Assembly (NCBI RefSeq): GCF_031769215.1 | Contig: NW_026782129.1 | Location: 930,001 to 994,000, forward strand | DNA: 64,000 nt | DNA from: Ylistrum balloti | Taxonomy: Eukaryota | Direction of reading: 5' to 3' | In this document: positions 20,058-49,579 of the stretch, one piece after another | Layout of the letters: every line of letters starts with the position of its first letter | Position numbering within the stretch: position 1 is the stretch's first letter | Program-made: the position numbers and the translations under genes | Notes under the pieces: generated by a model | The model's input: only the letters and a program-made list of their open reading frames with translations | Database searches by the model: none | Told to the model about the DNA's origin: nothing

Positions 20058-21527
20058 ATGGCGGAACATAATTGTCCACGTATAGCTGTGATCATCGTCA
20101 CAGTCTTTGTGTACATCGTCATGATAGCCTTTAATGCTTTATCTGGAGCTGGCGGACAAGCGCTGGGTAAGTAAATCTAAAATCGCTTTGTATATGAACA
20201 ACAACAAACAAACAAACGTTAGATACTATCATTGAAAACTCAAACAATACAAAAACAAAATGCTAAGAAGATAAACGAACCTGATCTGTACCAACGTGTT
20301 TTGATAACGATCAGTTGAAGGGATATGCTGTGAAATGCTGCTAATTAATATCCAAAACGTACAATTTCAGAAATACGTAGAAATATTATCCTTCATTACT
20401 AGCTATAACAAATAATAAATTGCAAAGCAAAAGATTGATAGATATCCATATAAAATCAAATTATTTCAGAAACAATCGTAAAATCTTGCATATTTTAATT
20501 TCTGGGAGTAAGTGAAGTGCCCTTTCGGTCAAAGTTCATGTTATCAACCAATCAAATAACCGGAAGGTCACACAAATGTCTCAGAGTGGAATATGAGAAT
20601 AAGAAGGTGTTTTATTTGAAATTTATGAAACTGCAACAGAAAGTTCTGCAATAGTCGATTAATGTTTAAGTCCACAAAATACTTCACCTGTATTTGTTTA
20701 TTGTATTTACAGGGATATTCAACAGCACTGTCGGTGACGTCTCCGATATTTTCTATCTCGAGGTGACTCCCGCGGGCTGGACGTTCAGTATCTGGGGCTT
20801 CATATACACATGGCAGGCCCTCTGGCTCATCTACGCCCTCACCACCATCTGTCGTAAAACTAAATCTGGAACCTACATCTACCAACTTCCGGTTCTTCCT
20901 CCAATAATATATGTATTGTACATTTTCAATAACATTTGCCTTGTCTCGTGGTTGTTTGTCTGGGATAGGAAAGAACTTATTTGGGCTTTAGTTACAATTG
21001 CCTTACTTCCTATCACTCTCGCTATAGCCCTCTTCTTTTCGTTCCGAAGGCTGTATCACAACCTCGAAGAACTTACAGAAGATGAGGCTGTCCGAGACAT
21101 CTGGCTCATACGTTTCTTGGTACAAAATGGCATGGCTTTCTTTGGTGCATGGGTAACCATAGCTACACTACTGAACGCTGCCATGGTGATGACCTACAGA
21201 GGTAACCTTACGAATGAAGATGCTTGCACAACTGCCTTGGGTATTTTGTCCTGCATCATTGTCACATGGTTTCTCCTTGACAATACAATACTGGACCGAT
21301 ATGTACGGTACACTTTCAGCCCCTACATTACACTTACTATTGGACTCAGTGGTGCCGTCGCTAAGAATTATGACATTCAACTTCATTATAGAAATTCCAT
21401 CTTTTTGTTGACTCTTCTTGTTGTCGCTGCGGTGATGCTTATTACCAAATTCCATATCATGATATTTCGCCATTTTCGGAAGCCTATTTCTTCTAAAATG
21501 CAATATAACATGAATGCTGAAATTTAA
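20058..21527 (+). CDS. Uncharacterised ~8-TM membrane protein with TspO/MBR-like N-terminal half, paralogue A, 307 aa
   Basis: join(20058..20166,20713..21527), phase-1 intron GTAAGT...TTTACAG. It begins MAEHNCPRIAVIIVTVFVYIVMIAFNALSGAGGQALG|IFNSTVGDVSDIFYLEVTPAGWTFSIWGFIY. Eight hydrophobic segments, and four homologues in this window. Confidence 0.92.
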
Positions 21528-21624
21528 GTAGTCACTCTGTTTATTTTTTTCTTGTCATTTTGAAGTAAATTGAGAACAGATATTTATCGTCTGTTCTGTG
21601 TAAGGAACATGGATTTCTAAAATT

Positions 21625-21776
21625 ACCGTTAAGTGGCTTGCCCCAAGATCGGTCAGTCTCTCAGCTTCCTGAGAAACTCAAACCGCCATGGTAGGTAGTC
21701 TCACCACACACCTCAGATCTCCACCTTGTTATGAATATCTAGGCCAACGCTCTATCAACCCAGCTGTTGTAGCCTC
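21625..21776 (-). mobile_element. tRNA-derived SINE remnant with CORE-like motif
   Basis: Minus strand: AGCTGGGTTGATAGAGCGTTGGCC (A-box-like), GGTTTGAGT (B-box-like), CTTGGGGCAAGCCACTTAAC (resembles the CORE-SINE CTTGGGCAAGTCACTTAAC). Confidence 0.5.
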
Positions 21777-21993
21777 AAAGATATTTTTGTATGATAATTA
21801 TTACTTTATTGTCGACTACTTGACGACATGTCCTTAGGAACAAAGAACATGTGATGGTTGATGGTTAATGTTATGTAAAACATACCTTAAGGAGCACTAA
21901 ATGTGTACCAGGTAAAGAATCAGTCATCGGACCACTGTATATTTTGTATATGACGTTTTTAACTCTTTTAGTTTAGCTATATTCGTCTTTGTA

Positions 21994-22172
21994 CGGAAGC
22001 CGGTTCGTGCAAGTATTTTTTCTCGTAATTACGACTTAATTATCTCGTAATTACGACTTAATTATCTTGTAAGTACGACTTAGGTATCTCATTTTTTCGA
22101 CCTCACTATGACGTAACTAAGTCTTAATTACGAGATAAAAAAAATACTTCAAGTGGCACTTACTGGCTTCCG
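21994..22172. mobile_element. MITE with TA target-site duplication and internal 22-bp tandem repeats
   Basis: TA|CGGAAGCC...GGCTTCCG|TA termini. The imperfect inverted arms extend through AAGTATTTTTT and CTCGTAATTA. About 4 copies of TCTCGTAATTACGACTTAATTA start at 22021, 22043, 22065 and 22087. Confidence 0.85.
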
Positions 22173-24089
22173 TAATTTAGTGAGCCACAGTATTTTTATT
22201 CGAAAACAAAGATACAACTTGTGCGAGATATACTTAAAGTACATCTTGACGCATTGGGTAGTAGGGCATTATTATCAATGACTAGAAGCTTCAGCTGTTA
22301 ATCCAAGATGGAAGGATAATTTGCTGATATTACAAGTATGAATGTCATCTGAAAGCCGTATATTATTTATATATCAGTTTCATAAATATCTTTTATGCCA
22401 TGTGAAATTTGAACCTAGGCGTTTAACACGATAGATTATGTAACGTTTATGTGCATTTCGTTGGATAAAATATTGAGATTCAGATGTGTTGACCTTTACG
22501 TTTGTTTGGTGTCAGATATGATGACGTGAATAATGTAACTTTGGTATGGTCATGTAAATGCCGGTTGGAAATTGATATTTGATGATAACAGCTAGACCTC
22601 TGTATCAAACTTATAAGGTATCAATATGGTATCCTAGATCACTACATCATCGTTACCTATTTCCCGATGGGATTTGTGCATTAATGCTAACTGAGTTAAT
22701 GAATGTAAAAGTTTGGTGACTTCTTCATTTTTCAACGTTTTGCGAAATATGTATTATTTCATCAAATTTCTTAACCGACATTTTTTCCCATAGTTTTTTT
22801 TTATTATTGTTATAATTTTCAATCGGATGATTCCAAATCTTGTACCCAGCTTCATTTCGGTTTTGTCAAGGGCAGTAATACAAGCGAGATTTCAATATAC
22901 TCACATTTTTAGAGAGTTACTATTCATACCGGAGAAAATACTGCTATTTGATTTCATTTTGCTTTTAGATTCAATTCAAATGTTTGTTAGAGTGACAAGC
23001 TTCAGAATAAAAAAAAATAAACACTGTTTATGTGTAAAATTTCATATACATCTCTCTTCTCAGTTAGTGTCAGTGAAGTTTATTTAATTATATGAATCTC
23101 CAGTTTGTATAACATGCAGTTGACACTTGCCACATATAGTTTTGCTGTTTTCAGCAATGACGGAAAACAGCTGTATTTTAGCACGTGTGGTAATTCGATA
23201 GAATTACTCTCTGAATTTACTTAAAAATTACGTTAAAAATATGAATTATTTATAAAAAAAGGCGTTATTATATGTTGTAATTAACACTTTTATTTAGGAA
23301 AATTCATAAAATCGTTGTCATATCCGTTGAAGTTTGTCTTCCTTCTTCCTAGCCAAAATACAGCTTATATTTTAAGACACTGTTCATGTACATTTATTCT
23401 CTATATACCTGATGTGATATTACCATTATCATGCTTAAGATCAAACGCAATTTGTTTGAGAAGATATACATATATAGGCATGAACTGCCTTTTTCATTGC
23501 TTCACTCAACTCATTTATACACCATTTTAATGAAACATTCAAATAATCAAATCCAAGTAATTATATTTTACATTTGTTATATGATATATATTTTATTATA
23601 TTTTATTATATGCATACTGTATAACAAACAGATATCACAATTACTTCCAAATAATGAGTGACGAAGGTTTCCGAGTCTATAACCGAAAATACGTAAACAG
23701 GAAACCATATGTGTTCTTATCTTCATTAGTAAGAATTTGTGTTTTCAAACGTGTTTAGCAATATTCAGACCATGAATGCGTACATTTGTCAAATTTATTT
23801 GAATTGTTTAAAGTTTTAGTATGTTTTATTTCCATTTAAAAGCCTGAAAAGATAGTGTTTTGATTTCTGACGTCATTTTCTAATTGTCTGTTTCTTCTGT
23901 TCTAATACATTGTAAAACTTATACGGTGCCGGATATGATAAAGCATAGCTACATGTGTATACTTGTATTACGGAGAGGACATTGATAACAAGTGTCCTAT
24001 ACTTTTATATATTATTTATGTAATAAAAATGGTTTTAATTTCAGTGTTGTTTATGACTGAGTGAGGTGACATGGTTATGACATTTCAGT

Positions 24090-24917
24090 AGGATAACACT
24101 AGGAGTCCATCATTACCCCTATTATACGTGGACTCTGGCATCATATGTCCCATATTATCACTAGGACATATAACAATTTATCACATAACCGACCCGTTTT
24201 CCCATGTCATACGCCCATGTCATAATAATGGTAATACACATGTGTAATAAAGGTTTGGGGTCTGCTGATTGGTCAAAACCGTGGGAACGTATTCATACGC
24301 CAGCGCGCGTACTACTTTTATTTACTACGACAACAAACTGTAGTAGAATATGGCTGACCAGATCAACATTGGCGACACAGTTTTTATTGATAAGAAGGGG
24401 ACTGGTGTGGTGAAGGTGATATTCTTACGGGGGTTGCTGTATTTTATAATGTTGAATTGTGTGGGATTGACTTTCAAATTGAGCTTGAGCCGAACCTGAT
24501 GACCCGTGATGACGAGGTGAGGTGACGTCACGTTACCAATATCAAGTGAATTTCCAGATTTTTTTCGTTTTTTTTTGTAATTTTTAAAAGTTATTTTGAC
24601 ATTAAATAGAATTTAAATGCTTTACTTTGTCGATATTATTTTGGAACATAATCTCTTATTCAATCATTGAAAAAAGGTACTATTTGCAACACGGATGGGT
24701 AAAACTATGATTGCTGTGCGTTGGTTTTGACCTATATAGAAACAGCTGATTGCATAGTGGAAGTAAATCGTAGTTTTCTGGCGATTTTTGCATTTTAATT
24801 GGTTATGTGATAAATAGAATCTTACACTCGTGTCAAAGTATTATGGAATTTATTAAACTCGTTCCATAAATTGATATGCCACTCGCCGATTGACACTCAT
24901 GTAAGATCCTCTATTTA
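24090..24917. mobile_element. Non-autonomous DNA element with subterminal inverted repeats and a terminal fold-back (Crypton-like, tentative)
   Basis: Perfect 15-bp inverted repeat ATTTATCACATAACC (24176-24190) / GGTTATGTGATAAAT (24801-24815). Fold-back TAAATAGAATCTTACACTCGTGTCAA ... TTGACACTCATGTAAGATCCTCTATTTA at 24811-24917. GAGTCCA/TGGACTC hairpin at ~24103-24136. The superfamily is not established. Confidence 0.5.
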
Positions 24918-26190
24918 CCAACCTCCATTTGAAGAAATACGAAACCAAGCTGGACATCATTCGTGAAAGATTTATACAAAGACTGTCAAAATCAAATATC
25001 TAGTAACGGTTTCAGAAAACCATAGATTTTTTCTGTGTGCCTTTGTCCCAAATTTAACAATCAGAATAATCACATTCTTCAATTATTAAATCTTGATCCT
25101 CAGAAATACACCTAGGGATTTCCTAATTATTTCAGGAAGTACATGTAATTACCTTTACCTCCTTTTGTCGGATACTGATGATTCCATAAACAACATATTC
25201 TTTGATTAGCTTGTCTAGTAGTGCATTTACTTAATGCTTGTAAAACTGTTAAAAATATGGTCTGCGACTAAACAGTAGTCATTTTCCATTCAAGTCTCTC
25301 ATATTCTTATTTTCATTCACAACTTTCCTATATCTATTAAAGCGGCAGAAAAATAAACAAGAAAACTCTGTAATCAATTCAATGTATATATTACAAAATT
25401 TAATAATGCCATAAAAATGTACAAAACATATACATAAGTTATCTATAAGCTCTCAAATTTGTTTCTGTGAAAATATTGTTCCCCTACTTAATAACACAGG
25501 TACTTCACTTGTATAAGGGAGACAACCGCGACGTTACAGTTATATAAACAAGACGAGACAGTGGCTTAAATAACAGAGAAAATGAAATAAATTTACGATA
25601 TAACAAAAATACACGCAGACAATCGCATCTAATGAAGGTGGTCCTAACAGCGTTGACTTGGTACATGGTTCAGATTTAATACCAGCAACGTCAGACCGGT
25701 AAGACTAGAGCACCAAGTAGTATATCACGGAAAATATAGCAATTGTTCACATCTAGTAATACGTGAATGACATGCAGTATACACCTAAAGAAACGGATAA
25801 ACAATATACAAAACTGTCAACTAACATGTCACTCTACTTTAACAACCATTTAACACTATATGAAAACATCAACTCGTTAACTTGTTTCTCTTGAATCCTA
25901 CGATGGTATTCATTGTGAACAGATTATGCGATTTCCTTATTTGGAGAAAGTATTTGCAATGTCGAAATGACTTATAGCTAATACTTTTGCTGCATTTATG
26001 CAATAAAGTACGTTTAAATCAATCAAATATATATAAGGTAATGCAGACCTAGATTATGATGTTGTGTTATAAAAAGTATGTGATGTCGGACCAGAAGCGG
26101 AATAAAATTATTATTTTGTTCATTACACTTAAGAAAACAGCACATTTAAAGCACCGGTCTGAATGCAACTCAGGCCTTCAGTTGTGTCAC

Positions 26191-27566
26191 TCATATAGTT
26201 GGTTCATATTCTATTTTTGGTGAAATAGGATTTTTAAAATGACGTACAAGCATTACGATAATTTTAGTGAGCAGTAACACGCCAGCTATGATGAGAAGAG
26301 TTAATGAAAACAGAGAATTCCGTTCACGGATATCAAGGTCATAGTTCTTAGAAACCACACCACCGAGTGCCATGGTTAAGGTAATGTAGGGACTGAAGGT
26401 GTACCGAACGTAACGGTCGAAAACCGTGTTTTCTAGGATGACCCACGTGGCTATGATAGCAGACAACATACCCAGAACGGCAGTACAGGCATCTTCATTA
26501 GAAATGCCGCCTTTATATGTCATCACCATAGCAACATTAAGCAAAGTGGCTATGGTAACCCAGGTGGCGTAGAAAGCCATGCCATTCTGTACTAAGAGGC
26601 GGATGAGCCAGATGTCTTTGACAGCGTTCTCCTTATTTAGCTTTCCAAGGTTATGGTACAGCCTCCGAAAAGAGAAGAACAGTGCCACATAGAGCGTGAT
26701 CGGGGTAAGGGCAATGACCACTAGTGACCACACTATTTCCTGTGTATCCCACACGAACAACCAGGCGACGTTTGCAATGTTGTTTAGAATGTATGAAACA
26801 TAGATGACTGGAGGAAGAACCGGAAGTAGGTAGATGTAGGTTCCAGATTTAGTTTTACGACAGATGGTGGTGAGGGCGTAGATAAGCCAAAGAGCCTGCC
26901 ATGCGTAGATGAATCCCCAAATACTGAACGTCCAGCCCGCGGGGGTGATCTGGAGTCTGAACACATTCGAGATTTCACCGGTTGTGTTCTTAAATAGTCC
27001 TGCAAGTAAAACAGCAGCTGTATTTCACAATCAAACCTAACAAGGAATATTCAGTGAATACAACACGAATTGGAGACTCTGTAAAGTCACATTAATACAT
27101 GGGACTAAGTACTACTGAATAGGAGCTACACTCGATGTTTTCTGTAAGATCTATGTGGACAAGTGGCTGGTTGTGCTTCGGAAGTCGCTGTGAGTAGAGG
27201 GCAGAGGCAAAAGTATTTACACTAAATAAGATCTTGACCTCTAACAATGTGTTTTGAAACTCACCGGACATATCTACCCCCCACCAGTATCCCATCCCGA
27301 CCATCACCTCGAGAATTTTACTTGCATAGTAATAATATAAACTTGCAGAAGTTTGAAAGATGTTGTTGTAATCTATCTGGTAACCAAATTGTTCACAGAT
27401 CAATTTTCGGCTGAAGTAATATTTATTTAGAGAACACCAGTCAGTTTGTCCACTTACCAATTTTTTGTCCGACAGATCCAGCCAGAGAGTTGAACACCAC
27501 CATGACGATGTATATAGCAACTGTCATGATGATCAGTAGAATACGCAAGCCGTTGTGGTCCGCCAT
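26191..27566 (-). CDS. ~8-TM TspO/MBR-like membrane protein, paralogue B, 305 aa
   Basis: complement(join(26191..26999,27458..27566)), phase-1 intron GTAAGT...TTGCAG. It begins MADHNGLRILLIIMTVAIYIVMVVFNSLAGSVGQKIG|LFKNTTGEISNVFRLQITPAGWTFSIWGFIY. Its closest relative is paralogue A, with which it is tail-to-tail. Confidence 0.92.
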
Positions 27567-28103: not shown

Positions 28104-28211
28104 GAGGACAGGATAGATAAATCCCCACCTGGGGAGGAGATTTCTGACAGTCCGAGGGTTAGGCTGTCAGGAATCTCCTCCCTAGGCAGAGATTTCTCTG
28201 TCCTACCCTCC
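28104..28211. mobile_element. Diverged fold-back element / MITE
   Basis: Arms GGGAGGAGATTTCTGACAG (28132-28150) and CTGTCAGGAATCTCCTCCC (28164-28182) differ by one mismatch. Imperfect symmetry continues outward to ~28104 and ~28211. Confidence 0.7.

Positions 28212-29582: not shown

Positions 29583-29584
<2 letters not shown>

Positions 29585-29614
<30 letters not shown>
29585..29614. repeat. (TA)n microsatellite
   Basis: About 15 TA units are directly visible. Confidence 0.95.
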
Positions 29615-34016: not shown

Positions 34017-35295
34017 TCAGACTATCGAGTTTGTTGATTTGTCCGACGTTGTTGGCGTGTACACCATTGGGGACAAAGGCACGCGGTTGTGACGGAGAAG
34101 AATGATGATAAATTTCAAGAATAAGAAAATACTAGAAACACATAAAATCGTTACTGAGAGAATGGAGTTGCGGTACCGAAGTTCAAGGTCAAAGTTTTCT
34201 GCAATCGACCCTGTAAGGGCTATTACGAGGACGATGTAAGGGCTGAACATGTATCTGGTGTAGTTGTCAAGTAGAATGTTCTCCGACAGGAACCACGAAA
34301 TCACGAAAAATAACAGCATGCCGAGAACTGTGGTACAAGCGATGTCATTGGCTACTCCTCCACTGTAGTGCATCACCATGGCAACATTAAGGTGGGTCGC
34401 AACAGTGACCCAAGTGGCATAAAATGCTACTCCGTTCTGAAGGAAAAAACGTATGAACCATGCTTCCTTACCCGCGCCATCTTTAATCAAGACACTGAGG
34501 TTATTGTGTACTGCCCGACAGGAGATACCCAATATTACGTATAAGGTCAATGTCACTAAAATAATGTCCGCCAGGGCAATTTCTATATATTTCCGGTCAA
34601 ACAATATCATCCAGGCAACGTTAAGTCCAAGATTCAGAATGTAAATGATATAGATTGCAGGAGGCATGACCGGAAGTTGATAGATGTAAATACCGCTGTC
34701 AGACTTCCGGCATATAGTAGAAAGTCCATATATAAGCCAAATGATTTGCCATATATAGATGAAAAACCATATGCTGAATGTCCAGCTGGCGGGGGTTATC
34801 TCCAGGTAGAAGTAATCAGACACGTCACCAGTACTACTCTCGTAGATACCTGTAATTCACAGAGAAAATTAAGGATTGAGTGCATGTTCTTCATGTTTTA
34901 GTTTATTACGATCTGGTTTATATCTAAAACATTTAATGAGGAGACAAAATAAAAGAAAACTTTGGCACATAATAAAACACTCAACTACATTTACAGCGTT
35001 TCTTTTATTTAACAAACTTCGATTAAAATCATCACGTGACTCTGTTCGATTGATCACCTGACTAAGTCAAATGATCACGTGCACGTGGCTAAAAACAATG
35101 TTTCAATTCTCTGAATGACTTTCCGAACATAGGTTTATGATAGGATGATAATGACTCTGTGGTCATATATTACTTACCAAGAGCTTTACCTTCACCTGAT
35201 CCTAGGTAATTGAAGAAAAGCGTCACACCGAACACGAGGACAGAAATCAGGATTAATGAGATTCTGTAACCGCTGTGTCCGGAATCGGCAGCCAT
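34017..35295 (-). CDS. ~8-TM TspO/MBR-like membrane protein, paralogue C, 316 aa
   Basis: complement(join(34017..34849,35178..35295)), phase-1 intron. It begins MAADSGHSGYRISLILISVLVFGVTLFFNYLGSGEGKALG|IYESSTGDVSDYFYLEITPASWTFSIW. Confidence 0.92.
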
Positions 35296-35406: not shown

Positions 35407-36086
35407 GTACAGATAGACAAAGAAAAACTTCCTCTCTAGAATCTGTCTGACCGTGTCTCTCTTTATACCACTAGGTATAGATAGACAAAGAGAAAATTCC
35501 TCTCTAGAATCTGTCTGACCGTGTCTCCCTTTATACCACTAGGTATAGATAGACAAAGAAAAACTTCCTCTCTAGAATCTGTCTGACCGTGTCTCCCTTT
35601 ATACCACTAGGTATAGATAGACAAAGAAAAACTTCCTCTCTAGAATCTGTCTGACCTTGTCTCCCTTGATACCACTAGGTATAGATAGACAAAGAAAAAC
35701 TTCCTCTCTAGAATCTGTCTGACCGTGTCTCCCTTGATACCACTAGGTATAGATAGACAAAGAAAAACTTCCTCTCTAGAATCTGTTTGACCGTGTCTCC
35801 CTTTATACCACTAGGTATAGATAGACAAAGGAAAACTTCCTCTCTAGAATCTGTCTGACCTTGTCTCCCTTGATACCACTAGGTATAGATAGACAAAGAA
35901 AAACTTCCTCTCTAGAATCTGTCTGACCGTGTCTCCCTTGATACCACTAGGTATAGATAGACAAAGAAAAACTTCCTCTCTAGAATCTGTCTGACCGTGT
36001 CTCCCTTGATACCACTAGGTATAGATAGACAAAGAAAAACTTCCTCTCTAGAATCTGTTTGACCGTGTCTCCCTTTACCACTCGGT
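35407..36086. repeat. 68-bp minisatellite, 10 copies
   Basis: The unit GTATAGATAGACAAAGAAAAACTTCCTCTCTAGAATCTGTCTGACCGTGTCTCCCTTTATACCACTAG starts at 35407, 35475, 35543 ... 36019. Confidence 0.98.
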
Positions 36087-36772
36087 ATCTATGATAAAAT
36101 TTATTTCTATACCTCTGTACAAAAGTTAAAACATGCCCTTTACTTAGTTAATGTTAATCGAATGAACAACCCCCTCTGGTAATGTTGTATGGAGGACTGA
36201 GAATATTTTAGAATACAATATACGGTGTCTTAAGTGATGTACAAAATTATATACGACATTCCTTTTTAGGGTGATACCACGCACATTATACGATAAAATA
36301 ATCAAAATATCTTGTTATCATTTGGTGTAGGATAGCATGAGCTCGACATTATATTTAGAATATAAATAATAATAAAAAAAAAACAGACATCATGTGAATT
36401 TTGCAATGATACACGCATTAAAATGTGAAAATATCAGTTTAGTTCTGTTTCTACGCTACATTTACTTTTAAAAGAAATGTTTATATCAAGGATACCTGTC
36501 GTAAGGTATATCCGCCAATAAGATGAAATTGTATAATGATTTGTGTTCTTCAAACTTTTTTTATCCTTTTTGGCAACAATATACTTAAATACTTTCAGTA
36601 TTTGTCCCTTGTAAATTTAAACAACTATTCACTTTAATCTTACCTTAGTATAACTGCGCTGTTGGTTAGTATTGGCCTGACTGCACTCCAATCCAACCGT
36701 TTCCCTTCAAGTACAAGTTCAATATTTGCTAAAATGCCATATACCCACGTTGTATATATATTCACAAGCTAA

Positions 36773-36790
36773 CACGTTACTCGAAACGTG
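36773..36790. promoter_or_regulatory. Tandem E'-box element CACGTT-N6-AACGTG upstream of paralogue C
   Basis: ACACGTT ACTCGA AACGTGAC. The same motif with the same spacing precedes paralogues D and E. It lies 129 bp from a candidate 5'UTR donor (exon end 36644, GTAAGA). Confidence 0.7.
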
Positions 36791-39010: not shown

Positions 39011-40562
39011 TAAAACATCAGAAACACGGATGCCAGGAACCATATACTGTAGTAAAACATCATATACACGGACGACAGGAACCATATACTGTAGTAAAAC
39101 ATCGGATACACAGTCGGCAGGAACCATATACTGTAGTAAAACATCATATATACAGACGACAGGAACTATATACTGTAGTAAAACTTTAGATACACGGACG
39201 GCAGGAACCATATACTGTGGTAAAACATTAGATACACGGACGACAGGAATCATATACTGTAGTAAAACATCAGATATACGGACGGCAGGAACCACATACT
39301 AAAGTAAAACATCAGATACACGGACGGCAGGAACCATATACTGTAGTAAAACATCAGATATACGGACGGCAGGAATCATATACTGAAGTAAAACATCAGA
39401 TACACGGACGATAGGAACAATATACTGTAGTAAAACATCATATATACAGACGACAGGAACTATATACTGTAGGAAAACATCAGATATACGGACGACAGGA
39501 ACCATACACTGTAGTAAAACATCAGATATACGGACGGCAGGAATCATATACTGAAGTAAAACATCAGATACACAGACGACAGGAACCATATACTGTAGTA
39601 AAACATCATATACGCGGACGACAGGAACCATACACTGTAGTAAAACATCAGATATACGGACGACAGGAACCATATACTATAGTAAAACATCAGATACACG
39701 GACGGCAGGAACCATATACTGTAGTAAAACATCAGATACACTGACGATAGGAACCATATACTGTAGTAAAACATCAGATATACGGACTGCAGGAACCATA
39801 TACTATAGTAAAACATCAGATACACGGACGGCAGGAACCATATACTGTAGTAAAACATCAGATACACTGACGACAGGAACCATACACTGTAGTAAAACAT
39901 CAGATACACGGACAGCAGGAACCACATACTGTAGTAAAACATCAGATATACGGACGACAGGAATCACATACTTTAGTAAAACGTCAGATACACGGACGAC
40001 AGGAACCATATACTGTAGTAAAACATCAGATACGCGGACGACAGGAACCATACACTGTAGGAAAACATCAGATATACGGACTGCAGGAACCATATACTAT
40101 AGTAAAACATCAGATACACGGACGGCAGGAACCATATACTGTAGTAAAACATCAGATACACGGACGGCAGGAACCATATACTGTAGTAAAACATCAGATA
40201 CACGGACGACAGGAATCATATACTTTAGTAAAACGTCAGATACACGGACGACAGGAACCATATACTGTAGTAAAACATCAGATACGCGGACGACAGGAAC
40301 CATACACTGTAGGAAAACATCAGATATACGGACTGCAGGAACCATATACTATAGTAAAACATCAGATACACGGACGGCAGGAACCATATACTGTAGTAAA
40401 ACATCAGATACACGGACGGCAGGAACCATATACTGTAGTAAAACATCAGATACACGGACGACAGGAATCATATACTTTAGTAAAACGTCAGATACACGGA
40501 CGACAGGAACCATATACTGTAGCAAAACATCAGATACACGGACGGCAGAAATGACACAGTAA
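39011..40562. repeat. 42-bp minisatellite, ~37 copies, with a 252-bp (6-mer) higher-order repeat
   Basis: Unit ACATCAGATACACGGACGACAGGAACCATATACTGTAGTAAA. The variant TACTTTAGTAAAACGTC recurs every 252 bp (~39968, 40220, 40472). ORFs 39973..40203 and 40225..40455 are identical. Confidence 0.98.
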
Positions 40563-42501
40563 AACATTCAACTGTAACGAAGCAGTCGAAACAGGAAAGG
40601 CAGCAACACCATATTTAAACAACAGACATATAAGACAACAAAATTAACCGGAAGTTTTGAGACAATCGAACAACTGGTTATCTAGCTCGCCGGACAGATG
40701 TGATACAATTCCTAATCAAAAGTTTCAATGAAGACAAACGTCTTGGTAGGTATTATTAAGGAGTCAGTAAAAAACAAAAAGTCTCAAATAACTTTCGTCA
40801 TTTTTAATAGTCTTCTGTAATTTACACTCAATTATGCATGTGTAAAGTCAGTGAGATACTTATTCCATGTAGTATCTCATTATTATTATGATACGATGTG
40901 TGTATGTAGTGAAGTTGACACAGGAACCACAGTCATGACTTATTCCTATATACAATTAAATATTCCTCTCATTGACGGAATCTTCATAACTCCACGCCAA
41001 GAGTCTCCAAAGTGACGTCATGACATAATGCCATATCATGACACTAAAGCGATCATACTGGATCCATCCATATCCAAATTATTGTAAGCGTATACAAGAG
41101 ACAAACATCGATTATGCAATTCGAGGGCAAATATTAGAAAATGGCATAGGCAGACACAACTAAACTGCATCTGTTCTGATATGCAAAGTGTTATATATTT
41201 GATATTAGAGGATATCTAATGGTTTATGTGAAATATCACATACATTCAAACATAAAAACAAGCGGTGTTTATAAAAGTTGGGGAAATATAACTGCGCTCT
41301 TTTGCGTCAATAGCTTGACATTACGCTTGACAACAAGATGTCGTTATTTTAAATAGGCTGTTTTACCTTTTTTCTACCAATTTATGATGTTGTTTGGTAA
41401 AAACTGCTTACAAAACTGTTTTTATATACCAAATTAGCGAAAATCAGAAACGGGAATCATTTGATGGAACTAACCTTGTTCAGCCAACGCTTCATTTGTG
41501 TCGGCGAATTTCAACGAAGTGATTAGAAAGCGATATTCTCGTTGATCAAAAGTACGAAAGTTATCAATCTCTTTCAGAGATGTCGTTCATTAATAGTAAA
41601 AATACACTTCTGTTAACGACTACCAACAGCTGACTTCGCGGTCAGGGTCAAAGTTTGAAATCGGGCAAAAATATGGTGGCATCCTGGATAACACCAACGA
41701 AGGAAACATTTGTTTTGTATGCCATCGATCAGCGTTAACGCCATTATCTTTCTGCGATAAATTTTACTACGTTTATAGCCATATTGATCAATGTAGTCAA
41801 TTTTTATTTAAACATATTTCATATTTTATGGAACAATTTCAAGTTTTTTCTATTAAGCTCTTTCACCACTTAACAAAGTACATAATGACAAGACAAAACA
41901 TGTTGAAAAAAAATTACACGGAGAGAGAGAGTGTGTGTGATTTGACGTATTTTTACATTGTCTTCCTTAGAGAAGTTATTTTTACCATATAGAAGTAACT
42001 TAAGGTCTACAACGATAAAATCCTTTGGTTCTCGGTAAAGAATTACTCTCCGATCCGCATAACTATTGAGAGTAACGTAATCATTTTTCAGGCTAACAAA
42101 TGTTTCTTTTCAAAATATCGACATAAATAACAAAATAGAGAAAACCAATTAAATAATTAGTTATTAGACACAAATACGTGTTTAAAGAATCTTAAAAAGG
42201 TGTGAGTTATTTACTGAGGTGATATGTAGGGTACCGCAATGCACTCTGGGAGAGATTCGAAAGTCATATCTTACTCACTGTAGTGATGATGTCAGTTATT
42301 ATCAAATCAAAAATATATATTACTGGCAAAAAATAATAAGCGAATCTGATGTCCCGAATTTTCATATCGAGCATCGGCATTTAACAATATATATATTTCC
42401 AATAATATGTGGCAATGAAAAGTTCATATTGAGGTATATCGCAAAAATTCATTCAGCAATGTCTCGTTTGAAACTGTTTCTGGAAAGCCTTCTGAAGACG
42501 T

Positions 42502-43829
42502 TTAAGCTTCCAACTTGAATGATTTTTCTGAACTCGTGGGCGTATGGCCACTTGCAGATAAAGGCGCGCGGTTGTGACGAACAAGGATTATAATCAGTTT
42601 CAAAATCAAGAACAACCCACTGATGCCTAATAGAATAAAAGATGTAATCGAGTTCCGGTACCGAAGGTCAAGGTCAAAATTTTTTGCCAACGAACCTGAT
42701 AGGGCTATGACGAGGACGATGTAAGGGCTGAACAGGTATCTTGTGTAGTTGTCAAGAAGGGTGATCTCTGTCAGGAACCACAAGATTACGAAAAATATCA
42801 GCATGCCGAGTGCAGTGGTACAGGCGATGTCATTGGCTACTCCTCCACTGTAGTGCATCACCATAGCAAGATTGAGATGGGTCGCAACAGTGACCCAAGT
42901 GGCATAAAATGCTATTCCGTTTTGAAGGAAAAAACGTATGAACCATGCTTCCTTACCCGCGCCATCCTTAATCAAGACACTGAGATTATTGTGTACTGCC
43001 CGGCAGGAAATGATAAGTATAACGAACAATGTCAATGCCATGATCGCGGCAGTCGGAAGAGAAATGTTTATGTACTTTCGGTCAAATAGCATCATCCAGG
43101 CAACGTTGAAACAAAGATTGAGAATGTAAGTAATATAGATTGTAGATGGCATGACCGGAAGTTGATAAATGTACACACCACTGTTTGACTTTCGACAGAT
43201 AGTAGAAAGTCCGTAAACAAGCCAGATAATTTGCCAAGTGTAGATAAAACCCCATATTGAGAATGTCCAACCAGCAGGAGTTATCTCCAGGTAGAAATAA
43301 TCCGATATGTTGGCAGTAGTGCTCTCGTAGAGACCTATATATGAACAAGAAAACGAAATATAAAAAAAAACTTCAAGTCATTATATATCTATATTCAACT
43401 CTTAAATAATCTCATTAAACATGCGATTTTTACCTAGAACATTTAAACGCGTGTTTAGCTGAGAATAGTACATCCGCAAGTGTTACGTGCAAATTACATA
43501 TCGATTTCGTTGAGCAATGCTCTTCAGATTCATGTTTTTCGTAACGATTTAACATTCTTATATAGGTGTGATACACTTTTAATAAGAATAGAAACTATCT
43601 GGTAGAAGCGAAACTAATACTTAATACTTAAACTGAAATTTGTTACCAACGGAAATCGTCCTATCACCTGGTACAATGACCTGATCGTCTACGGAATGAA
43701 CAACTTACCGATAGATATACCAATATCACCGACGGCCAGATAGTTGATGACAAAGGTCACAATAAAAAAGAAACACGTCAGCAGCATCAGCAGGATGCGG
43801 TAACTGCTGTGTTGGGGTTTGGAACTCAT
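42502..43829 (-). CDS. ~8-TM TspO/MBR-like membrane protein, paralogue D, 317 aa
   Basis: complement(join(42502..43334,43709..43829)), phase-1 intron GTAAGT...ATATAG. It begins MSSKPQHSSYRILLMLLTCFFFIVTFVINYLAVGDIGISIG|LYESTTANISDYFYLEITPAGWTFSIWGFIY. Confidence 0.92.
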
Positions 43830-45105
43830 CTTCGATATCTGAAAAAGAGTATTTTCTTGTGTTTTTTTATCATATGTAGACAAAGTGATCTGACATTCTA
43901 CCTGATAGAAAGTCAAGATACTAACCAGAATTTCCAATTCTTAAGTAACAACACCAACAACTATGCCGGTATTCTGGCAATGACTTACGGAATTCATAAT
44001 AATGATAATAATAACAGACAAGACATAGGTAAAAAAGGAGAAAATACATATTTCATTGCTGTCCTGCAAAGTCTAGATACAATCTCCCAGAATCCAGGAG
44101 TTTCCAAGTATTACCATAAATACAAGTCTGTAGTACTTAACGAACCTAGGTGTTTGTGTTTCTGTCTTTCTAGTTTTATTATATAAAAAATGTAGAAGTA
44201 AAATAGCTTACAATATGACTCAAGACAAAAATACAATAAATTACAAGTGCTTTTTATAACCTGTGTCTTATGCAATTAAATTACTTTGATATACAATATT
44301 TCAAATTATTATCGATGACTCAGTGACATACAGATCTTGGTAAATAATATTTTCTTTTTAATGTTGGTTGTCCGACTCTAGTAGGATAAAACCTGAAAAC
44401 AATTCATACCTTTTAAATAAACAAAACAAGCAATGTAAGTTTGATACGGGAAATCGATTAAGAGGATATGTATTATTATTGTGTCTAAGAAAAAAATTGT
44501 TCTTATCACGAGTTCTGCATGTACCTACATGCATGTGCAGTCAAAATTAATACGAGTGCAGCTTTGTTTCGGTAAAGCATACATACATGTATGCCATTTG
44601 CATCGAATTCTTAACACACTCATAATTATGAAGATTTATTTTGCCAATATTTTCCTGCTGAAGAAGATCTTCTTTCCATTGTTGATATGACCTATGTCAT
44701 GTATACTGTTTAGAGCGGACGTGATGAGATGTACAATCTTTGTATTAGGACTGGATGGATATAGATCACAGAAATAGTGTTGACTGTAAGCTGTATACGG
44801 TACATTTAGTCCAAAGAAGAATGAGAGGAAGCGGACACAAAAACAATTTTCGTATAAAACCTTTATCTCAATGGAACAATCAAATAGTTGGACGTAGTAT
44901 TGATATTCTGATATATAACAATGTTAGGTGTAGGCTAAGTATGGTTTCTCTATTGTGCGTGTTCATACGGAAGTTAAAGGGTACATATATATCGGTGGCA
45001 AATCAATTATCATGGTAGATTCTCATTTTAATACTGTGGGAAGAGATTGGAAATGTTTTTGTCCACTGTTTGCTGCAGTTTTATCCTTTTAACATTAGCC
45101 TTCTG

Positions 45106-45327
45106 AAAGCATTGGCCTGCTGAAAACACTGGCCTGCTGAAAACACTGGCCTACTGAAAACATTGGCCTGCTGAACACATAGGCCTCCTGAAAACATTGG
45201 CCTACTGAAAACACTGGCCTGCTGAACACATTGGCCTAATGAAAACATTGGCCTACTGAAAACACTGGCCTGCTGAACACATTGGCCTAATGAAAACATT
45301 GGCCTACTGAAAACATAGGCCTGCTGA
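45106..45327. repeat. ~17-bp tandem repeat, ~13 copies, with 51-bp higher-order periodicity
   Basis: Units of the form AAAACA(C/T)TGGCCT(G/A)CTG. The 17-aa repeat in ORF 45081..45458 reflects the 51-bp period. Confidence 0.93.
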
Positions 45328-45619
45328 AGGTTAACATGATAAAAAATTATCATTGATATTTTATCACACTGGTTGGAATATTTTGTACTGTGACCTATCA
45401 TTACCGATGAGCAGTAGTTTTTAACAGAACGAGAATTTGAAGAAATCGCCATGCACATTGTTTTGTCTTAAAAATCTCTCCCATCCTCACATATTAAACA
45501 TGTTGTTAATGTTAATAGGGATATATTATACTTACCTAAAACCTTCTTCTAATAACCGTGTGTCTGCACCCGTCCCCTACGGTACATTTGTGTTTAGTAC
45601 CCCAATACTCGCTAGCATA

Positions 45620-45637
45620 CACGTTTTCTGAAACGTG
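45620..45637. promoter_or_regulatory. Tandem E'-box element upstream of paralogue D
   Basis: ACACGTT TTCTGA AACGTGAC. It lies 84 bp from a candidate 5'UTR donor (exon end 45536, GTAAGT). Confidence 0.7.
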
Positions 45638-47171
45638 ACATCCTTTTTTAAATGATTTTTAACCACTGATCCTTGACAAAATATCTGGGCCGTCTACACG
45701 TGTATACAGCCTTTGCGTAACCATACGTAAGCGAAATAACGTGCCGTTGTGTAAGCCTGATGTTGTTTATTGGCAAACTACTGCAACTTTATACATAACT
45801 TACAATGTTAAAAGGGATGAGCATCTCCTTGTTACCATGAAGGTCTAACATACTGAGATCACCGCGTCAGGATAGAGAAACACGAACGATCCGATCTGGA
45901 GACGTTAGACACACCTGTAACTTGTATACACTAAGTATACGAACGCCTAGTCTCCATGTTAACAGCTAGGTAATGCTGGTTATTGTACAACGAACATTGT
46001 CTGGAAAACAGAAAAAAATGTGTATAGTTTTATTGAAGACAGAGAGTTTTTTTCTAGAATACCCGACATAAAAGCTACTTCAAATATGTACTAAAATATG
46101 AGATACACAGACGGTATCCATCATATACTAACACATATATTTCTCTGGTTCGTTTTGCCACCATGATAGTAAATCCAATCCATGGTGCAGATGATTCGAT
46201 ATCCAAAGATTTGATCCAAATATGACGACTTTGATGCAAGATGTCGGCAACTGACGGACAACTTCGTATCGAAAGGTTTCAAGAGAAGCAGGTTGATAAA
46301 AATGATGGAGATTTGTTACGGTCGTCTTAATAGCCTCACTCAGAATTAAGAGGTGCAGTTTATATTGTTGTGGATATGAAGTTGGGCGTGGTTGGTGCCC
46401 GTTAGTATACCTGTGTTTTTGCTACATCTCTGTTGACATTACTTACACGTACTTGGATTGACTAAGATTTACACAGCGGGTGTCGTCGACGAAGCAGAAA
46501 CCACAAACCCTTCCTTGATACTGTCCTAAAGTCAATGAATTTGAGTCTAAATTAGCATTCTGTTGACATGTCGGGGTTTTTTTGTCGCAAGTTACAAACA
46601 AGTAAATCTATGAATTAATGATACCATGTACTAGTTATCAGACACTCAAATATCGCAATCAAATTAAAATGATTAAATGCTCATCTATTAACACGAGGTT
46701 ATGCCTGCACATGTAAGACAAGTACTTACCATTACTAAACGTTATCATCCGTACTTACCAGTACTTGTCATCGAAACAGTTCTTATTAGCTCTTAGTAGA
46801 TATGATTTGGGAAAAAAATATCAGGAAAAGCACGGAGAAATCATCTTTATCTATCTTTAATATTCTGCAATCAATTCAACGTGTACAATTACAATATATT
46901 TGTTGTAATTTGGCTAAACAAATCCAACTAGATTTAATACGTCAATCAAATATATCTATTCAATGTTTCTAGAATAATATTTTGTACATATTCAAAATTA
47001 TAATTAAGTTATAAACCGTCAATTGCTTTCATACATAAAATATGACGAACATGAATATTAATGTTATTAAGCAGCAAAAGAAAGGATGATTAGCAAAACT
47101 GTAACTAGATTAACTGTGCATTCTACCTCGATGCTCTTCCGAATCGATAATCTGGCGGATAAACGAATGTT

Positions 47172-47835
47172 GATGCAGAGAGAAAGAGACAGGTTTAGCC
47201 GGATGGGTCACTATAAAGGAAAGCGTCCCACAAAAGCATTACTAAACGTTATCATCCGTTACTACAACAATTACGATGCAGACAGAAAGAGACAAGTTAA
47301 GCCGGATGGGTCACTATAAAGGAAAGCGTCCCACAAAAGCTACAACAATTACGATGCAGAGAGAAAGAGACATGTTTAGCCGGATGGGTCACTATAAAGG
47401 AAAACGTCCCACAAAAGCATTACTAATCGTTATCATCCGTTACTACGGCAATTACGATGCAGAGAGAAAGAGACAGGTTTAACCGGCTGGGTCACTATAA
47501 AGGAAAGCGTCCAACAAAAGCATTACTAATCGTTATCATCCGTTACTACGGCAATTACGATGCAGAGAGAAAGAGACATGTTTAGCCGGATGGGTCACTA
47601 TAAAGGAAAACGTCCCACAAAAGCATTACTAATCGTTATCATCCGTTACTACGGCAATTACGATGCAGAGAGAAAGAGACAGGTTTAACCGGATGGGTCA
47701 CTATAAAGGAAAGCGTCCCACAAAAGCATTACTAATCGTTATCATCCGTTACTACGGCAATTACGATGCAGAGAGAAAGAGACAGGTTTAACCGGCTGGG
47801 TCACTATAGAGGAAAGCGTCCGTTACTACGACAAT
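47172..47835. repeat. 103-bp minisatellite, ~7 copies
   Basis: Units start at 47172, 47275, 47353 (the second unit carries a 25-bp deletion), 47456, 47559, 47662 and 47765. Confidence 0.97.
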
Positions 47836-48191
47836 ACTAAAAGTCGGTGCTTAACGTCCTACATAGTTATGTAAAGGCATCTCTTAAAAAGAATCAGCAT
47901 TGAAGTTGTTTTTGATATTATAAGTAGTTATAATCTCTGTGTATATATATCGTCCATCATTATGTTCTATAAACTACCCGTACAGAGAAAGTTATGGCTA
48001 GATCTCACTTAGAGCAAGATATAAACAAATTAGCCAGAAACTGTATTATGCCGAATAGTATAGTATCCGCAAACATCACCAATTCACATATATGATATTA
48101 TGAACTGCCTTCACTTGAATATTGGCCTCAATACATGGTGTTAGTGTGGTTTCCCAATAGTTTTAGGTTGAAAAGGGTTTTAAGAAGCCGT

Positions 48192-49579
48192 TTATGCATT
48201 CGACTTCATGACCTTTTCGGTTGAAGTGGGTTTGTAGACAGTTGGAGACAAAGGTTTACGGTTGTGACGAATGAGAATAATGATGAGTTTCAAGACAACG
48301 AAAAATCCAGATATACCTAAAAGAATTACTGCGAGGATCGAGTTCCGATACCGAAGGTCAAGGTCGAAGTTTTTCGTAATCGACCCTGTAAGGGCTATTA
48401 CGAGGACAATGTAGGGACTGAATATGTATCTGGTGTAGTTGTCCAGTAGGATGTTCTCCGTCATGAACCACAAAATCACGAAAAATGTCAACATGCTGAG
48501 TGCAGTGGTAGACGCGATGTCGTTAGCTACTCCTCCGCTGTAACACATAACTATGGCAAGGTTAAGATGAGTCGCAACAGTGACCCAAGTGGCATAAAAT
48601 GCTATTCCGTTCTGAAGGAAAAAGCGTATGAACCATGCTTCCTTACCCGCGCCATCTTTAATCAAGACACTGAGGTTATTGCGTACTGCCCGACAGGAAA
48701 TGATAAGTATAACGTACAATGTCAATGCCATGAGCGCGGCATCTGGAAGAGAAATGTTTACGTACTTCCGGTCAAATAGTATTATCCAGGCAATGTTAAA
48801 TCCAAGATTGAGAATGTAAGTGATATAGATTGTAGGAGGCATGACCGGAAGTTGATAGATGTAAATCCCGCTTTCTGTTTTCCGGCAGATGGTAGAAAGT
48901 CCGTATACGAGCCATAGTATTTGCCATGCGTAGATGAAAGCCCATATCGTGAATGTCCAACCAGCAGGAGTTATCTCCAGGTAGAAGTAATCAGACACGT
49001 TACCAGTATTGCTCTCGTAGATACCTGTAACATATCAGGGAACAAGGATCGTGTATGCCATTTACTATAATTTTCAAATCATATGCCGAACTGTAAAGTA
49101 ATCAAAAGTAAGGAAACGTATGTTTGAGAAATCTTACCTTGTTTGGAAAAGCAATAACTGTCTTAGAGTAGTGGGGGGTTGGGGGGGGGGGTTCTCGGTC
49201 AAAATTAGGTAAAGGTGGTTCTCCTCTTTGTATGCTACACGTCATGGAAAGGTCCATATACGCATGTATCAGGTTCTCGAGTCCCTGTGTACGAGATCTT
49301 GTATCAGGTTCTCGAGACCCTGTGTCCGAGATCTTGTATCAGGTTCTCGAGTCCCTGTGTACGAGGTATTCTTGTCGGATGTTTTGGTTTTGCAACAATT
49401 GTTGTCAATATCACAGATAACTACTTTTCTACTTTTATATTCCTCATTAATGTGATTATATCTGACTTACCAAGAGATTGCCCGGCCTCAGCTGATGCCA
49501 GGTAATTAAAGAAAAGTGTCACACCTAACACAAGGCATGTCAACAGGATTAGTGAGACACGGTAGCAGCTGTGTGCCAT
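48192..49579 (-). CDS. ~8-TM TspO/MBR-like membrane protein, paralogue E, 313 aa
   Basis: complement(join(48192..49024,49471..49579)), phase-1 intron GTAAGT...TTACAG. It begins MAHSCYRVSLILLTCLVLGVTLFFNYLASAEAGQSLG|IYESNTGNVSDYFYLEITPAGWTFTIW. Confidence 0.92.
49266..49366. repeat. 35-bp tandem repeat, 3 copies, in the intron of paralogue E
   Basis: GTATCAGGTTCTCGAGTCCCTGTGTACGAGATCTT at 49266, 49301 and 49336. Confidence 0.95.

What the first reader, a model, noticed from the sequence alone, without database searches (positions are those of the whole stretch)
20058..49579. Five-gene cluster of an uncharacterised 8-TM TspO-like protein family
Seen: five intact ORFs (305-317 aa) share the same layout, with an acceptor 9-10 nt before the ATG, TM1 on a 109-121-nt exon, a phase-1 intron and the rest on one exon. 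They form two subfamilies, A/B (convergent) and C/D/E (tandem). Conserved motifs are TPA(G/S)WTF(S/T)IW..IY, N..W...(W/F)DR, QNG.AF(Y/F)..WVT.AT.LN and FSPYI. Established: TSPO/TspO proteins have a PxW.F..W..LY first helix and an NxxW motif and bind porphyrins or sterols. Inference: a lineage-specific expansion of a ligand-binding membrane family of unknown function (I recall similar proteins being grouped with zebrafish si:ch211-161h7.5, not verified here), possibly diversified for sensing or detoxification.
Basis: partly seen in the sequence, partly recalled or inferred. Interest (0 to 1): 0.7.

Follow-up and report, generated by a model that had tools for sequence, protein, structure and literature searches.

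The report
Scallop cluster of long TspO-like genes
Five neighbouring, intact scallop genes encode an eight-helix relative of the porphyrin-binding membrane protein TSPO; the family occurs from bacteria to fish, nobody has studied it, and there are first hints that it responds to light.

Summary
The window (saucer scallop, Ylistrum balloti) carries five intact paralogues of 305-317 aa. Each has a 109-121-nt first coding exon holding helix 1, a phase-1 GTAAGT intron, and one large second exon. Four models equal NCBI "uncharacterized protein" entries letter for letter.

The TSPO link also holds. Pfam TspO_MBR passes its cut-off for gene C and matches 6 of 15 family members at E<=0.1. In an AlphaFold model, residues 11-201 superimpose on two solved bacterial TSPOs, ranks 1-2 of 48,161 chains. 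The TSPO helix-2, helix-3 and helix-5 motifs are kept. The TSPO loop-1 signature is not kept, and three extra helices follow.

This is not a scallop novelty:
- Relatives also occur in echinoderms, cnidarians and annelids.
- Bacterial "tryptophan-rich sensory proteins" of about 235-270 aa align through helix 7.

All copies are under purifying selection (dN/dS 0.08-0.23). A and B have one-to-one Pecten orthologues, while C/D/E look like a later triplication. Expression in this species could not be tested.

Function remains inferred: a glycosylated, ligand-binding TSPO-superfamily protein, most likely binding a tetrapyrrole. Weak leads suggest light or clock control.

The parts
20058..20166 (+). 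Gene A, first coding exon (helix 1), 109 nt, phase 1
   Evidence: Sequence read: ATG at 20058, donor G|GTAAGT at 20167, AG 10 nt before the ATG. Profile match to family positions 1-37.
20713..21527 (+). Gene A, second coding exon with stop (helices 2-8)
   Evidence: Open frame; acceptor ...TTTACAG| at 20712; 86% identical to Pecten maximus LOC117315576.
27458..27566 (-). Gene B, first coding exon, 109 nt
   Evidence: The model equals P0012 / LOC132550096. The transcript contig L015 of a related scallop aligns up to this exon end.
26191..26999 (-). Gene B, second coding exon with stop
   Evidence: L015 continues from exon 1 directly into this exon, skipping the 458-nt intron.
35178..35295 (-). 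Gene C, first coding exon, 118 nt
   Evidence: The model equals P0001 / LOC132550133.
34017..34849 (-). Gene C, second coding exon with stop
   Evidence: Pfam TspO_MBR 31 bits against a cut-off of 24. The AlphaFold model of P0001 has pLDDT 82.8.
43709..43829 (-). Gene D, first coding exon, 121 nt
   Evidence: The model equals P0005 / LOC132550063.
42502..43334 (-). Gene D, second coding exon with stop
   Evidence: The frame is open through the whole exon; the model is confirmed.
49471..49579 (-). Gene E, first coding exon, 109 nt
   Evidence: The model equals P0004 / LOC132550134.
48192..49024 (-). Gene E, second coding exon with stop
36773..36790 (.). Palindrome CACGTT-N6-AACGTG, 1.5 kb upstream of gene C (candidate regulatory site or part of a 5' non-coding exon)
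   Evidence: Three exact hits in the window against 0.22 expected, one upstream of each of C, D and E. The core is conserved in the alignment. The motif is also found upstream of both C-type genes of Pecten maximus.
45620..45637 (.). Same palindrome, 1.8 kb upstream of gene D
50338..50355 (.). Same palindrome, 0.76 kb upstream of gene E

Best explanation
The span holds five functional paralogous genes, plus a sixth divergent copy on another contig. They belong to an old, widespread but unstudied 'long' branch of the TspO/MBR (TSPO) superfamily.

Shown:
- Helices 1-5 (about residues 10-204) form a TSPO-type five-helix bundle.
- This bundle keeps the conserved cavity residues of TSPO. In gene C numbering against mouse TSPO these are: helix 2 W62/F64/W67/Y71 = W47/-/W53/Y57; helix 3 N116/W119 = N92/W95; helix 5 W186/A190/N194 = W143/A147/N151.
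- Three more helices (207-295) follow. They are not a repeat of the first part.
- These extra helices are shared with bacterial homologues of about 235-270 aa.

Inferred:
- The protein binds a flat hydrophobic ligand from within the bilayer. A tetrapyrrole is most likely, as for TSPO, whose helix-2 and helix-5 tryptophans serve protoporphyrin IX binding and photo-oxidative breakdown.
- It does this in a different cellular place from mitochondrial TSPO. The loop between helices 1 and 2 has lost the TSPO W-x-x-x-L-x-K-P signature. Instead it carries a conserved N-glycosylation sequon. That argues for insertion in the ER with this loop facing the lumen or the outside, and both termini in the cytoplasm.
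- The scallop cluster arose by an old A/B/C-type split followed by a later triplication of the C type. All copies are kept by purifying selection.
For: Gene models and their identity to NCBI proteins.

TSPO homology:
- Pfam PF03073 gives 31 bits on C exon 2 and 28.8 bits on full-length C (residues 51-198 against profile 21-144), with a cut-off of 24. It matches 6 of 15 family members at E<=0.1, best E 4.2e-8.
- The AlphaFold model has pLDDT 82.8, pTM 0.81 and eight long helices.
- In an exhaustive structural search, ranks 1 and 2 of 48,161 chains are TSPOs. They are 4ryi_A (Z 11.2, rmsd 3.5, 147 of 151 residues, 18% identity, model 11-201) and 8e7w_A (Z 10.7, 147 of 157).
- Profile-profile alignment to canonical animal TSPOs has E 0.0022 and aligns the three motifs in order.
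- Numbering was transferred to mouse TSPO through.
- The roles of the two tryptophans come from PMC10598825.

A separate canonical TSPO gene exists in the same genome.

Breadth of the family:
- 3514 cluster representatives match at E<=0.001.
- Named members occur in molluscs, nemerteans, annelids, brachiopods, echinoderms, hemichordates, cnidarians, sharks, eels, coelacanth and amphibians. All are 'uncharacterized'.
- Bacterial homologues align over residues 3-267 with probability 96.8%, E 2.6e-10. They are auto-named tryptophan-rich sensory protein.

Other points:
- There is no internal repeat.
- Sequon enrichment: 111 of 131 members carry N-x-S/T in the 25 residues before the P-A-G-W motif, at 3.54 per 100 aa against 0.54 elsewhere.
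- Purifying selection: dN/dS is 0.08-0.23 in all pairs.
- Orthology tree.
- An orthologue transcript is spliced at the predicted junction.
Against: - Foldseek found no PDB match at all.
- The VIA Z of about 11 lies in the range that helical bundles can reach by arrangement alone. Designed repeat proteins follow at Z 10.4 and 9.0.
- The hhalign probability to canonical TSPO is only 13%.
- A family profile found no PDB sequence even at E 10.
- Genes A and B give no Pfam TspO hit on their own, and D and E stay below the cut-off.
- The TSPO loop-1 signature is absent. PMC10598825 finds that loop important for porphyrin binding.
- No ligand, localisation or glycosylation was tested.
- No RNA evidence was obtained for this species. 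The only run found consists of DNA contigs.
Confidence: 0.6

Rival explanations
1. The proteins are homologous to TSPO but have changed function. The conserved bundle serves something other than tetrapyrrole binding, for example lipid or sterol handling, a scaffold for partner membrane proteins, or transport. The three extra helices would provide the new activity.
For: The loop-1 signature that TSPO needs for porphyrin binding is replaced. Three extra conserved helices carry their own motifs: Y-T-R-Y-x-F-S-P-Y and A-K-N-F-D. The sequon pattern points to a different compartment. The long form is old and separate from canonical TSPO, which coexists in the same genome.
Against: The residues kept invariant are exactly the TSPO cavity residues, including both functional tryptophans and the A147 position. 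The predicted loop 1 still has a short helix (46-52), as in TSPO.
Confidence: 0.3
2. The resemblance to TSPO is a chance or convergent similarity of tryptophan-rich helical bundles. The family is unrelated to TSPO.
For: Foldseek found nothing. The hhalign probability is 13%. Z of about 11 is not exceptional for helical proteins. Most single members miss the Pfam cut-off.
Against: Three independent lines agree. First, Pfam hits are above the curated cut-off in several members. Second, TSPO chains are ranks 1-2 of 48,161, cover 94-97% of the target, and have the highest identity in the list. Third, three motifs align in the same order and on the same helices. Bacterial long-form clusters carry PF03073 in 18-62% of members.
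Confidence: 0.05
3. Several of the five copies are redundant, silent duplicates on their way to decay, and only one or two matter.
For: No RNA data could be obtained for this species. Tandem families often contain silent members. Pecten maximus has one 'LOW QUALITY' copy.
Against: All five have intact frames and canonical splice sites. The duplicates are old (dS 0.58-1.37) yet keep dN/dS at 0.15-0.23 between paralogues and 0.08-0.13 against orthologues. C, D and E each keep the upstream palindrome exactly.
Confidence: 0.1

Closest known systems
TSPO / TspO (18-kDa translocator protein, tryptophan-rich sensory protein; Pfam PF03073; structures 4RYI, 4UC1/8E7W, 2MGY)
   Same: Helices 1-5 share the five-helix bundle. 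The conserved helix-2 (P-x-x-W-x-F...W..L/I-Y), helix-3 (N-x-x-W) and helix-5 (W-x-x-x-A-x-x-L-N) motifs are kept. These include the two tryptophans implicated in protoporphyrin IX binding and breakdown, and the A147 position. A short helix is predicted in loop 1.
   Different: The proteins are about twice as long (305-317 aa against 162 aa for the scallop's own TSPO) and have three extra C-terminal helices. The loop-1 W-x-x-x-L-x-K-P signature is absent and is replaced by a sequon-bearing loop. Helices 4 and 5 are longer by about 20 residues. There is no clear CRAC-type motif after helix 5. The likely compartment is the secretory pathway rather than the mitochondrial outer membrane. No ligand is known.
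Vertebrate 'uncharacterized protein si:ch211-161h7.5' and 'si:dkey-29d8.3' (fish, shark, coelacanth, amphibians)
   Same: These are full-length homologues of about 300-340 aa, 35-38% identical, with E down to 1e-96 and the same motifs. They belong to the same family as the scallop genes.
   Different: They come from different phyla. There is no functional study of them either. The only mention found is a zebrafish differential-expression table (PMC11589825).
Bacterial long 'tryptophan-rich sensory protein' homologues of about 235-270 aa (e.g. Amaricoccus tamworthensis; Pseudomonadota, Actinomycetota)
   Same: They align with the animal family from helix 1 through helix 7 (probability 96.8%). 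They have the same Q/T-P-A/P-G-W-A/T-F-S-I-W-G-x-I-Y motif and eight hydrophobic segments.
   Different: They are shorter, with shorter loops and no sequon loop. They match neither Pfam nor NCBIfam. They were found in only 5 of 81 sampled relatives of that bacterium.

Membership tests
TspO/MBR (Pfam PF03073) | Sequence match to the family HMM above the curated cut-off (24 bits) | tested here: inconclusive
   Met for gene C: 31 bits on exon 2 and 28.8 bits on the full protein. Six of 15 family members match at E<=0.1. Not met for A and B (no hit), D (10.8 bits) or E (17.2 bits) taken alone.
TspO/MBR (Pfam PF03073) | Five-helix transmembrane bundle superimposable on solved TSPO | tested here: met
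   Model residues 11-201 align to 4ryi_A (Z 11.2, rmsd 3.5, 147 of 151 residues). Residues 11-204 align to 8e7w_A (Z 10.7, 147 of 157). These are ranks 1-2 of 48,161 chains. Foldseek itself found nothing.
TspO/MBR (Pfam PF03073) | Conserved motifs: helix 2 P-P-x-W-x-F-x-P-x-W-x-x-L-Y, helix 3 L-N-W-x-W, helix 5 W-x-x-x-A-x-x-L-N | tested here: met
   hhalign aligns the three motifs in order. The family invariants W62, F64, W67, Y71, N116, W119, W186, A190 and N194 fall on TSPO invariant or near-invariant columns.
TspO/MBR (Pfam PF03073) | Conserved loop 1 between helices 1 and 2, with the W-x-x-x-L-x-K-P signature and a short helix | tested here: not met
   The sequence signature is invariant in canonical TSPOs (W32, L36, P39). 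It is absent from the family, whose loop reads G-I/L-Y/F-x-x-x-T-G-x-x-S-D-x-F-Y-L-E. A short helix (46-52) is still predicted there.
TspO/MBR (Pfam PF03073) | Size and architecture: about 150-180 aa, five helices only | tested here: not met
   The proteins are 305-317 aa with eight predicted helices. The scallop's canonical TSPO is 162 aa.
TspO/MBR (Pfam PF03073) | Binding of tetrapyrroles, cholesterol or PK11195 | not testable with these tools
   This needs purified protein.
Long TspO-like family (si:ch211-161h7.5 / si:dkey-29d8.3 and relatives) | Full-length homology, about 300 aa, eight helices, motifs T-P-A-G/S-W-T-F, N-x-x-W, Q-N-G...W-V-T-x-A-T-x-L-N, F-S-P-Y | tested here: met
   E values run from 1e-92 to 1e-146 against named members, covering 90-99% of the query. 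The motifs are invariant in the 15-member alignment.

The most novel reading that the evidence does not exclude
The long TspO-like family is a light- or clock-controlled photoprotective membrane protein of animals and bacteria. It would handle a photosensitising tetrapyrrole or another chromophore in secretory-pathway or surface membranes.

Three weak, independent leads point this way:
- In one RNA-seq table, zebrafish si:ch211-161h7.5 is the most strongly induced gene alongside per2, cry5 (6-4 photolyase), cry-dash and ddb2. These genes form the light/ROS D-box set.
- The one bacterial homologue found by DNA pattern sits directly upstream of a photolyase-related (DPRP) gene.
- The C, D and E genes here, and both C-type genes of Pecten maximus, carry an exact CACGTT-N6-AACGTG double E'-box-like palindrome upstream.
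Probability: 0.15. Interest if true: 0.8.

Novelty: new variant of a known kind. Interest (0 to 1): 0.45.

Why it matters
TSPO is heavily used as an imaging marker and drug target, yet its physiological role is still disputed. A second, eight-helix branch of the same superfamily keeps the TSPO cavity residues but appears to sit in another membrane system. It is present from bacteria to fish and amphibians and has no published study. That makes it a natural comparison case. If it binds or degrades tetrapyrroles, that would support porphyrin handling as the ancestral role of the fold. If it proves to be light-induced, that would tie the fold to photoprotection. The scallop cluster itself is an ordinary tandem family. 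Its value is as a clean set of five diverged, selected paralogues with a shared upstream element.

Tried and rejected
- Foldseek against the PDB gave no hit. A family-profile search of PDB sequences gave nothing even at E 10.
- NCBIfam has no family for either the animal or the bacterial proteins.
- The weak Pfam hits to herpesvirus glycoprotein M and Abhydrolase_9_N on gene A are below their cut-offs. I take them as hydrophobic-helix noise.
- Internal duplication, with the C-terminal three helices as a partial TSPO repeat, is rejected: hhalign E 0.28.
- Expression in Y. balloti could not be tested. The single run offered turned out to be genomic DNA contigs that cover introns and intergenic DNA.
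- Guilt by association in bacteria did not hold. The photolyase-related neighbour seen in Amaricoccus is not repeated at the four other bacterial loci examined, so it remains a single anecdote.
- D-box consensus sites in the window are not enriched (7 against 3.4 expected) and are not in the promoters.
- Literature searches for PTHR33802, si:dkey-29d8.3 and six scallop LOC identifiers found nothing. The supplements of a zebrafish light-transcriptome paper do not list the gene.
Full report
**What is there.**
The span holds five large open exons of 257-277 listed codons. Gene D's exon is open further upstream than the ORF lister shows. A tblastn of each exon against the whole window finds exactly these five copies and no more. 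Identity is 68-70% within A/B, 78-82% within C/D/E, and 50-54% between the groups.

Each large exon is preceded by a short ATG-initiated exon encoding one hydrophobic helix. That exon ends in G|GTAAGT, and the intron is phase 1 and 328-546 nt long. The first coding exons are 109, 109, 118, 121 and 109 nt. In all five genes an AG follows a pyrimidine-rich run 9-10 nt before the ATG. This fits a further non-coding 5' exon, which I could not place.

**Identity with public models.**
A protein search names the organism as Ylistrum balloti. It returns four "uncharacterized protein" entries: LOC132550096, LOC132550133, LOC132550063 and LOC132550134.

In one search a script tried exon-1/exon-2 junctions for each gene and printed only the coordinates of the junction whose translation equals a database protein. 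B, C, D and E match letter for letter. That was the only place where exons were joined.

All downstream searches used either single exons by reference or protein ids returned by the database. Gene A had no database counterpart among the fetched proteins. It was analysed exon by exon only, and its 307-aa length is a count, not a searched model.

**Relation to TSPO.**
- Pfam TspO_MBR scores 31 bits on gene C's second exon and 28.8 bits on full-length C (residues 51-198 against profile positions 21-144), with a cut-off of 24 bits. It matches 6 of 15 family members at E<=0.1, best E 4.2e-8. A and B alone give no hit, and D and E are sub-threshold.
- An AlphaFold model of C, built with a 15-sequence alignment, has mean pLDDT 82.8 and pTM 0.81. 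It shows eight long helices: 9-39, 62-86, 103-124, 128-162, 166-202, 207-232, 242-258 and 265-295. There is also a short helix at 46-52 in the first loop.
- Foldseek found nothing in the PDB.
- The exhaustive VIA search puts Bacillus cereus TSPO first (4ryi_A: Z 11.2, rmsd 3.5 Å, 147 of 151 residues, 18% identity, model 11-201). Rhodobacter TSPO is second (8e7w_A: Z 10.7, 147 of 157). Generic designed helical proteins follow.
- The scallop has its own canonical TSPO on another contig, a 162-aa "translocator protein-like".
- A profile of 16 canonical animal TSPOs aligns to the family profile at E 0.0022, though with only 13% probability. The three hallmark motifs line up in order:
  - helix 2: T-P-A-G-W-T-F-S-I-W-G-F-I-Y against P-P-N-W-V-F-G-P-V-W-T-x-L-Y;
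  - helix 3: N-V-A-W against L-N-W-A-W;
  - helix 5: Y-A-T-W-V-T-I-A-T-L-L-N against Y-L-A-W-V-T-L-A-S-A-L-N.

Through the alignment of scallop TSPO to mouse TSPO, family W62, W67, Y71, N116, W119, W186, A190 and N194 correspond to mouse W47, W53, Y57, N92, W95, W143, A147 and N151.

In B. cereus TSPO, a helix-2 tryptophan (W51) supports protoporphyrin IX binding and a helix-5 tryptophan (W138) supports its breakdown (PMC10598825). Equating these with the columns above rests on my knowledge of the TSPO literature and was not tested here. However, every tryptophan of helices 2 and 5 is conserved, so the conclusion does not depend on that numbering.

**Where it differs from TSPO.**
- The conserved TSPO loop 1 (W-x-x-x-L-x-K-P), which that paper finds important for ligand binding, is not present.
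- The family loop instead carries an N-x-S/T sequon in 111 of 131 full-length-like members. Sequon density there is 3.54 per 100 residues against 0.54 elsewhere.
- Together with the basic tail after helix 8, this suggests a topology with both termini in the cytoplasm and a lumenal or extracellular, glycosylated loop 1. That implies a secretory-pathway location. This is inference only.
- Helices 6-8 are no repeat of the N-terminal part. They have their own conserved motifs.

**Breadth and age of the family.**
- A profile search of 1.84 billion cluster representatives finds 3514 relatives at E<=0.001 and 407 at E<=1e-30.
- Named members come from limpets, abalone, oysters, mussels, octopus, brachiopods, nemerteans, annelids, starfish, sea cucumber, acorn worms, corals, a copepod, sharks, eels, coelacanth and amphibians. 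All are "uncharacterized", or named after the zebrafish clones si:ch211-161h7.5 and si:dkey-29d8.3.
- A pattern scan of bacterial genomes found a 235-251-aa homologue in Amaricoccus tamworthensis with the same helix-2 motif. Four more were found among 81 related genomes.
- The bacterial alignment matches the animal profile over residues 3-267 at 96.8% probability, E 2.6e-10.
- Atlas clusters of such bacterial proteins are auto-named tryptophan-rich sensory protein. Some carry PF03073 in 18-62% of members.
- The eight-helix form is therefore an old branch, not a mollusc invention.

**History of the cluster.**
- The genome holds the five window copies plus one divergent copy on contig C427.
- In a maximum-likelihood tree, A pairs with Pecten maximus LOC117315576. 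B pairs with P. maximus LOC117315586 and Mizuhopecten LOC110464882. C/D/E fall in a 100/100 scallop clade that is unresolved inside.
- The Pecten B-type and two C-type genes lie within about 30 kb of one another on the same chromosome record.
- Synonymous distances among C, D and E (0.58-0.73) are smaller than to the Pecten or Mizuhopecten C-type genes (0.79-0.94). A-B is 1.37.
- So A, B and a C-type ancestor predate the scallop radiation. C/D/E probably triplicated later in the Ylistrum line, although gene conversion could mimic this.
- dN/dS is 0.08-0.23 throughout, which argues that every copy is functional.

**Expression.**
- The one public run found holds 46% of the sampled words of the stretch I submitted. 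When laid on the window, it covers introns and intergenic DNA with polymorphisms. It is therefore genomic DNA and says nothing about RNA.
- Indirect support comes from transcript-like Logan contigs of 1.8-1.9 kb from other bivalves, which carry uninterrupted full-length reading frames.
- One of them (L015, 78% identical to B at protein level) aligns to exon 1 up to 27457 and then continues at 27001. It skips the intron within 1-2 nt of the predicted junction (27458|26999).

**Leads on function.** These are weak.
- The only paper mentioning the zebrafish gene lists si:ch211-161h7.5 at +4.03 log2 fold change (PMC11589825 Table 2). It sits alongside per2, cry5, cry-dash, ddb2 and soul5, in melatonin-treated fish against untreated fish under a light-stress protocol.
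- per2, the photolyases and ddb2 are the known light/ROS-induced D-box genes of zebrafish (PMC7891740).
- In Amaricoccus the homologue abuts a photolyase-related DPRP gene on the same strand. Four other bacterial loci do not repeat this.
I confirm three exact copies in the window (0.22 expected), one upstream of each of C, D and E and none near A or B. The core is conserved in an otherwise diverged alignment.
- There are two more copies upstream of the two C-type genes of Pecten maximus (0.03 expected). None lies within 6 kb upstream in Mizuhopecten.
- These three hints do not add up to a demonstration. They do define a cheap experiment.

**Verdict.**
"Lineage-specific expansion" is only partly right, and function remains inferred. 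The cluster is an ordinary tandem family of already annotated genes. The family it belongs to is a real, unstudied eight-helix variant of TSPO.

Noticed in passing
window 36773-36790, 45620-45637, 50338-50355; L029 3252-3269 and 11153-11170: An exact CACGTT-N6-AACGTG palindrome lies upstream of genes C, D and E only, and upstream of both C-type genes in Pecten maximus. In upE a GTAAGT follows within about 10 nt, so the element might sit at the end of a non-coding first exon rather than in a promoter.
   Followed up: partly
G000:C427:602944-603738 (L006): A sixth, divergent family member lies on another contig. It is about 32% identical to gene B and has an open frame of 297 aa without stops.
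   Followed up: no
G000:C977:329760-330779 (L011, L012): The scallop's canonical TSPO gene (162 aa) is multi-exon. It also appears to carry helix 1 on its own exon, as the long-form genes do.
   Followed up: no
window 35407-36088, 39011-40548, 45091-45328, 47346-47821, 49265-49365: There are minisatellites between and inside the genes: 68 bp x 10 just upstream of gene C's ATG, 42 bp x 37, 51 bp x 4.7, 103 bp x 4.6, and 35 bp x 2.9 inside gene E's intron. They create long spurious ORFs on both strands.
   Followed up: no
L016 1824-2579 and about 2570-4087: In Amaricoccus tamworthensis the long TspO-like gene is immediately followed, on the same strand, by a deoxyribodipyrimidine photolyase-related (DPRP, PF04244) gene. 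A metallo-beta-lactamase-fold gene lies divergently upstream.
   Followed up: yes
L017 16433-19520: A DDE_3 transposase gene sits about 4 kb from the B-type gene in the Pecten maximus cluster.
   Followed up: no
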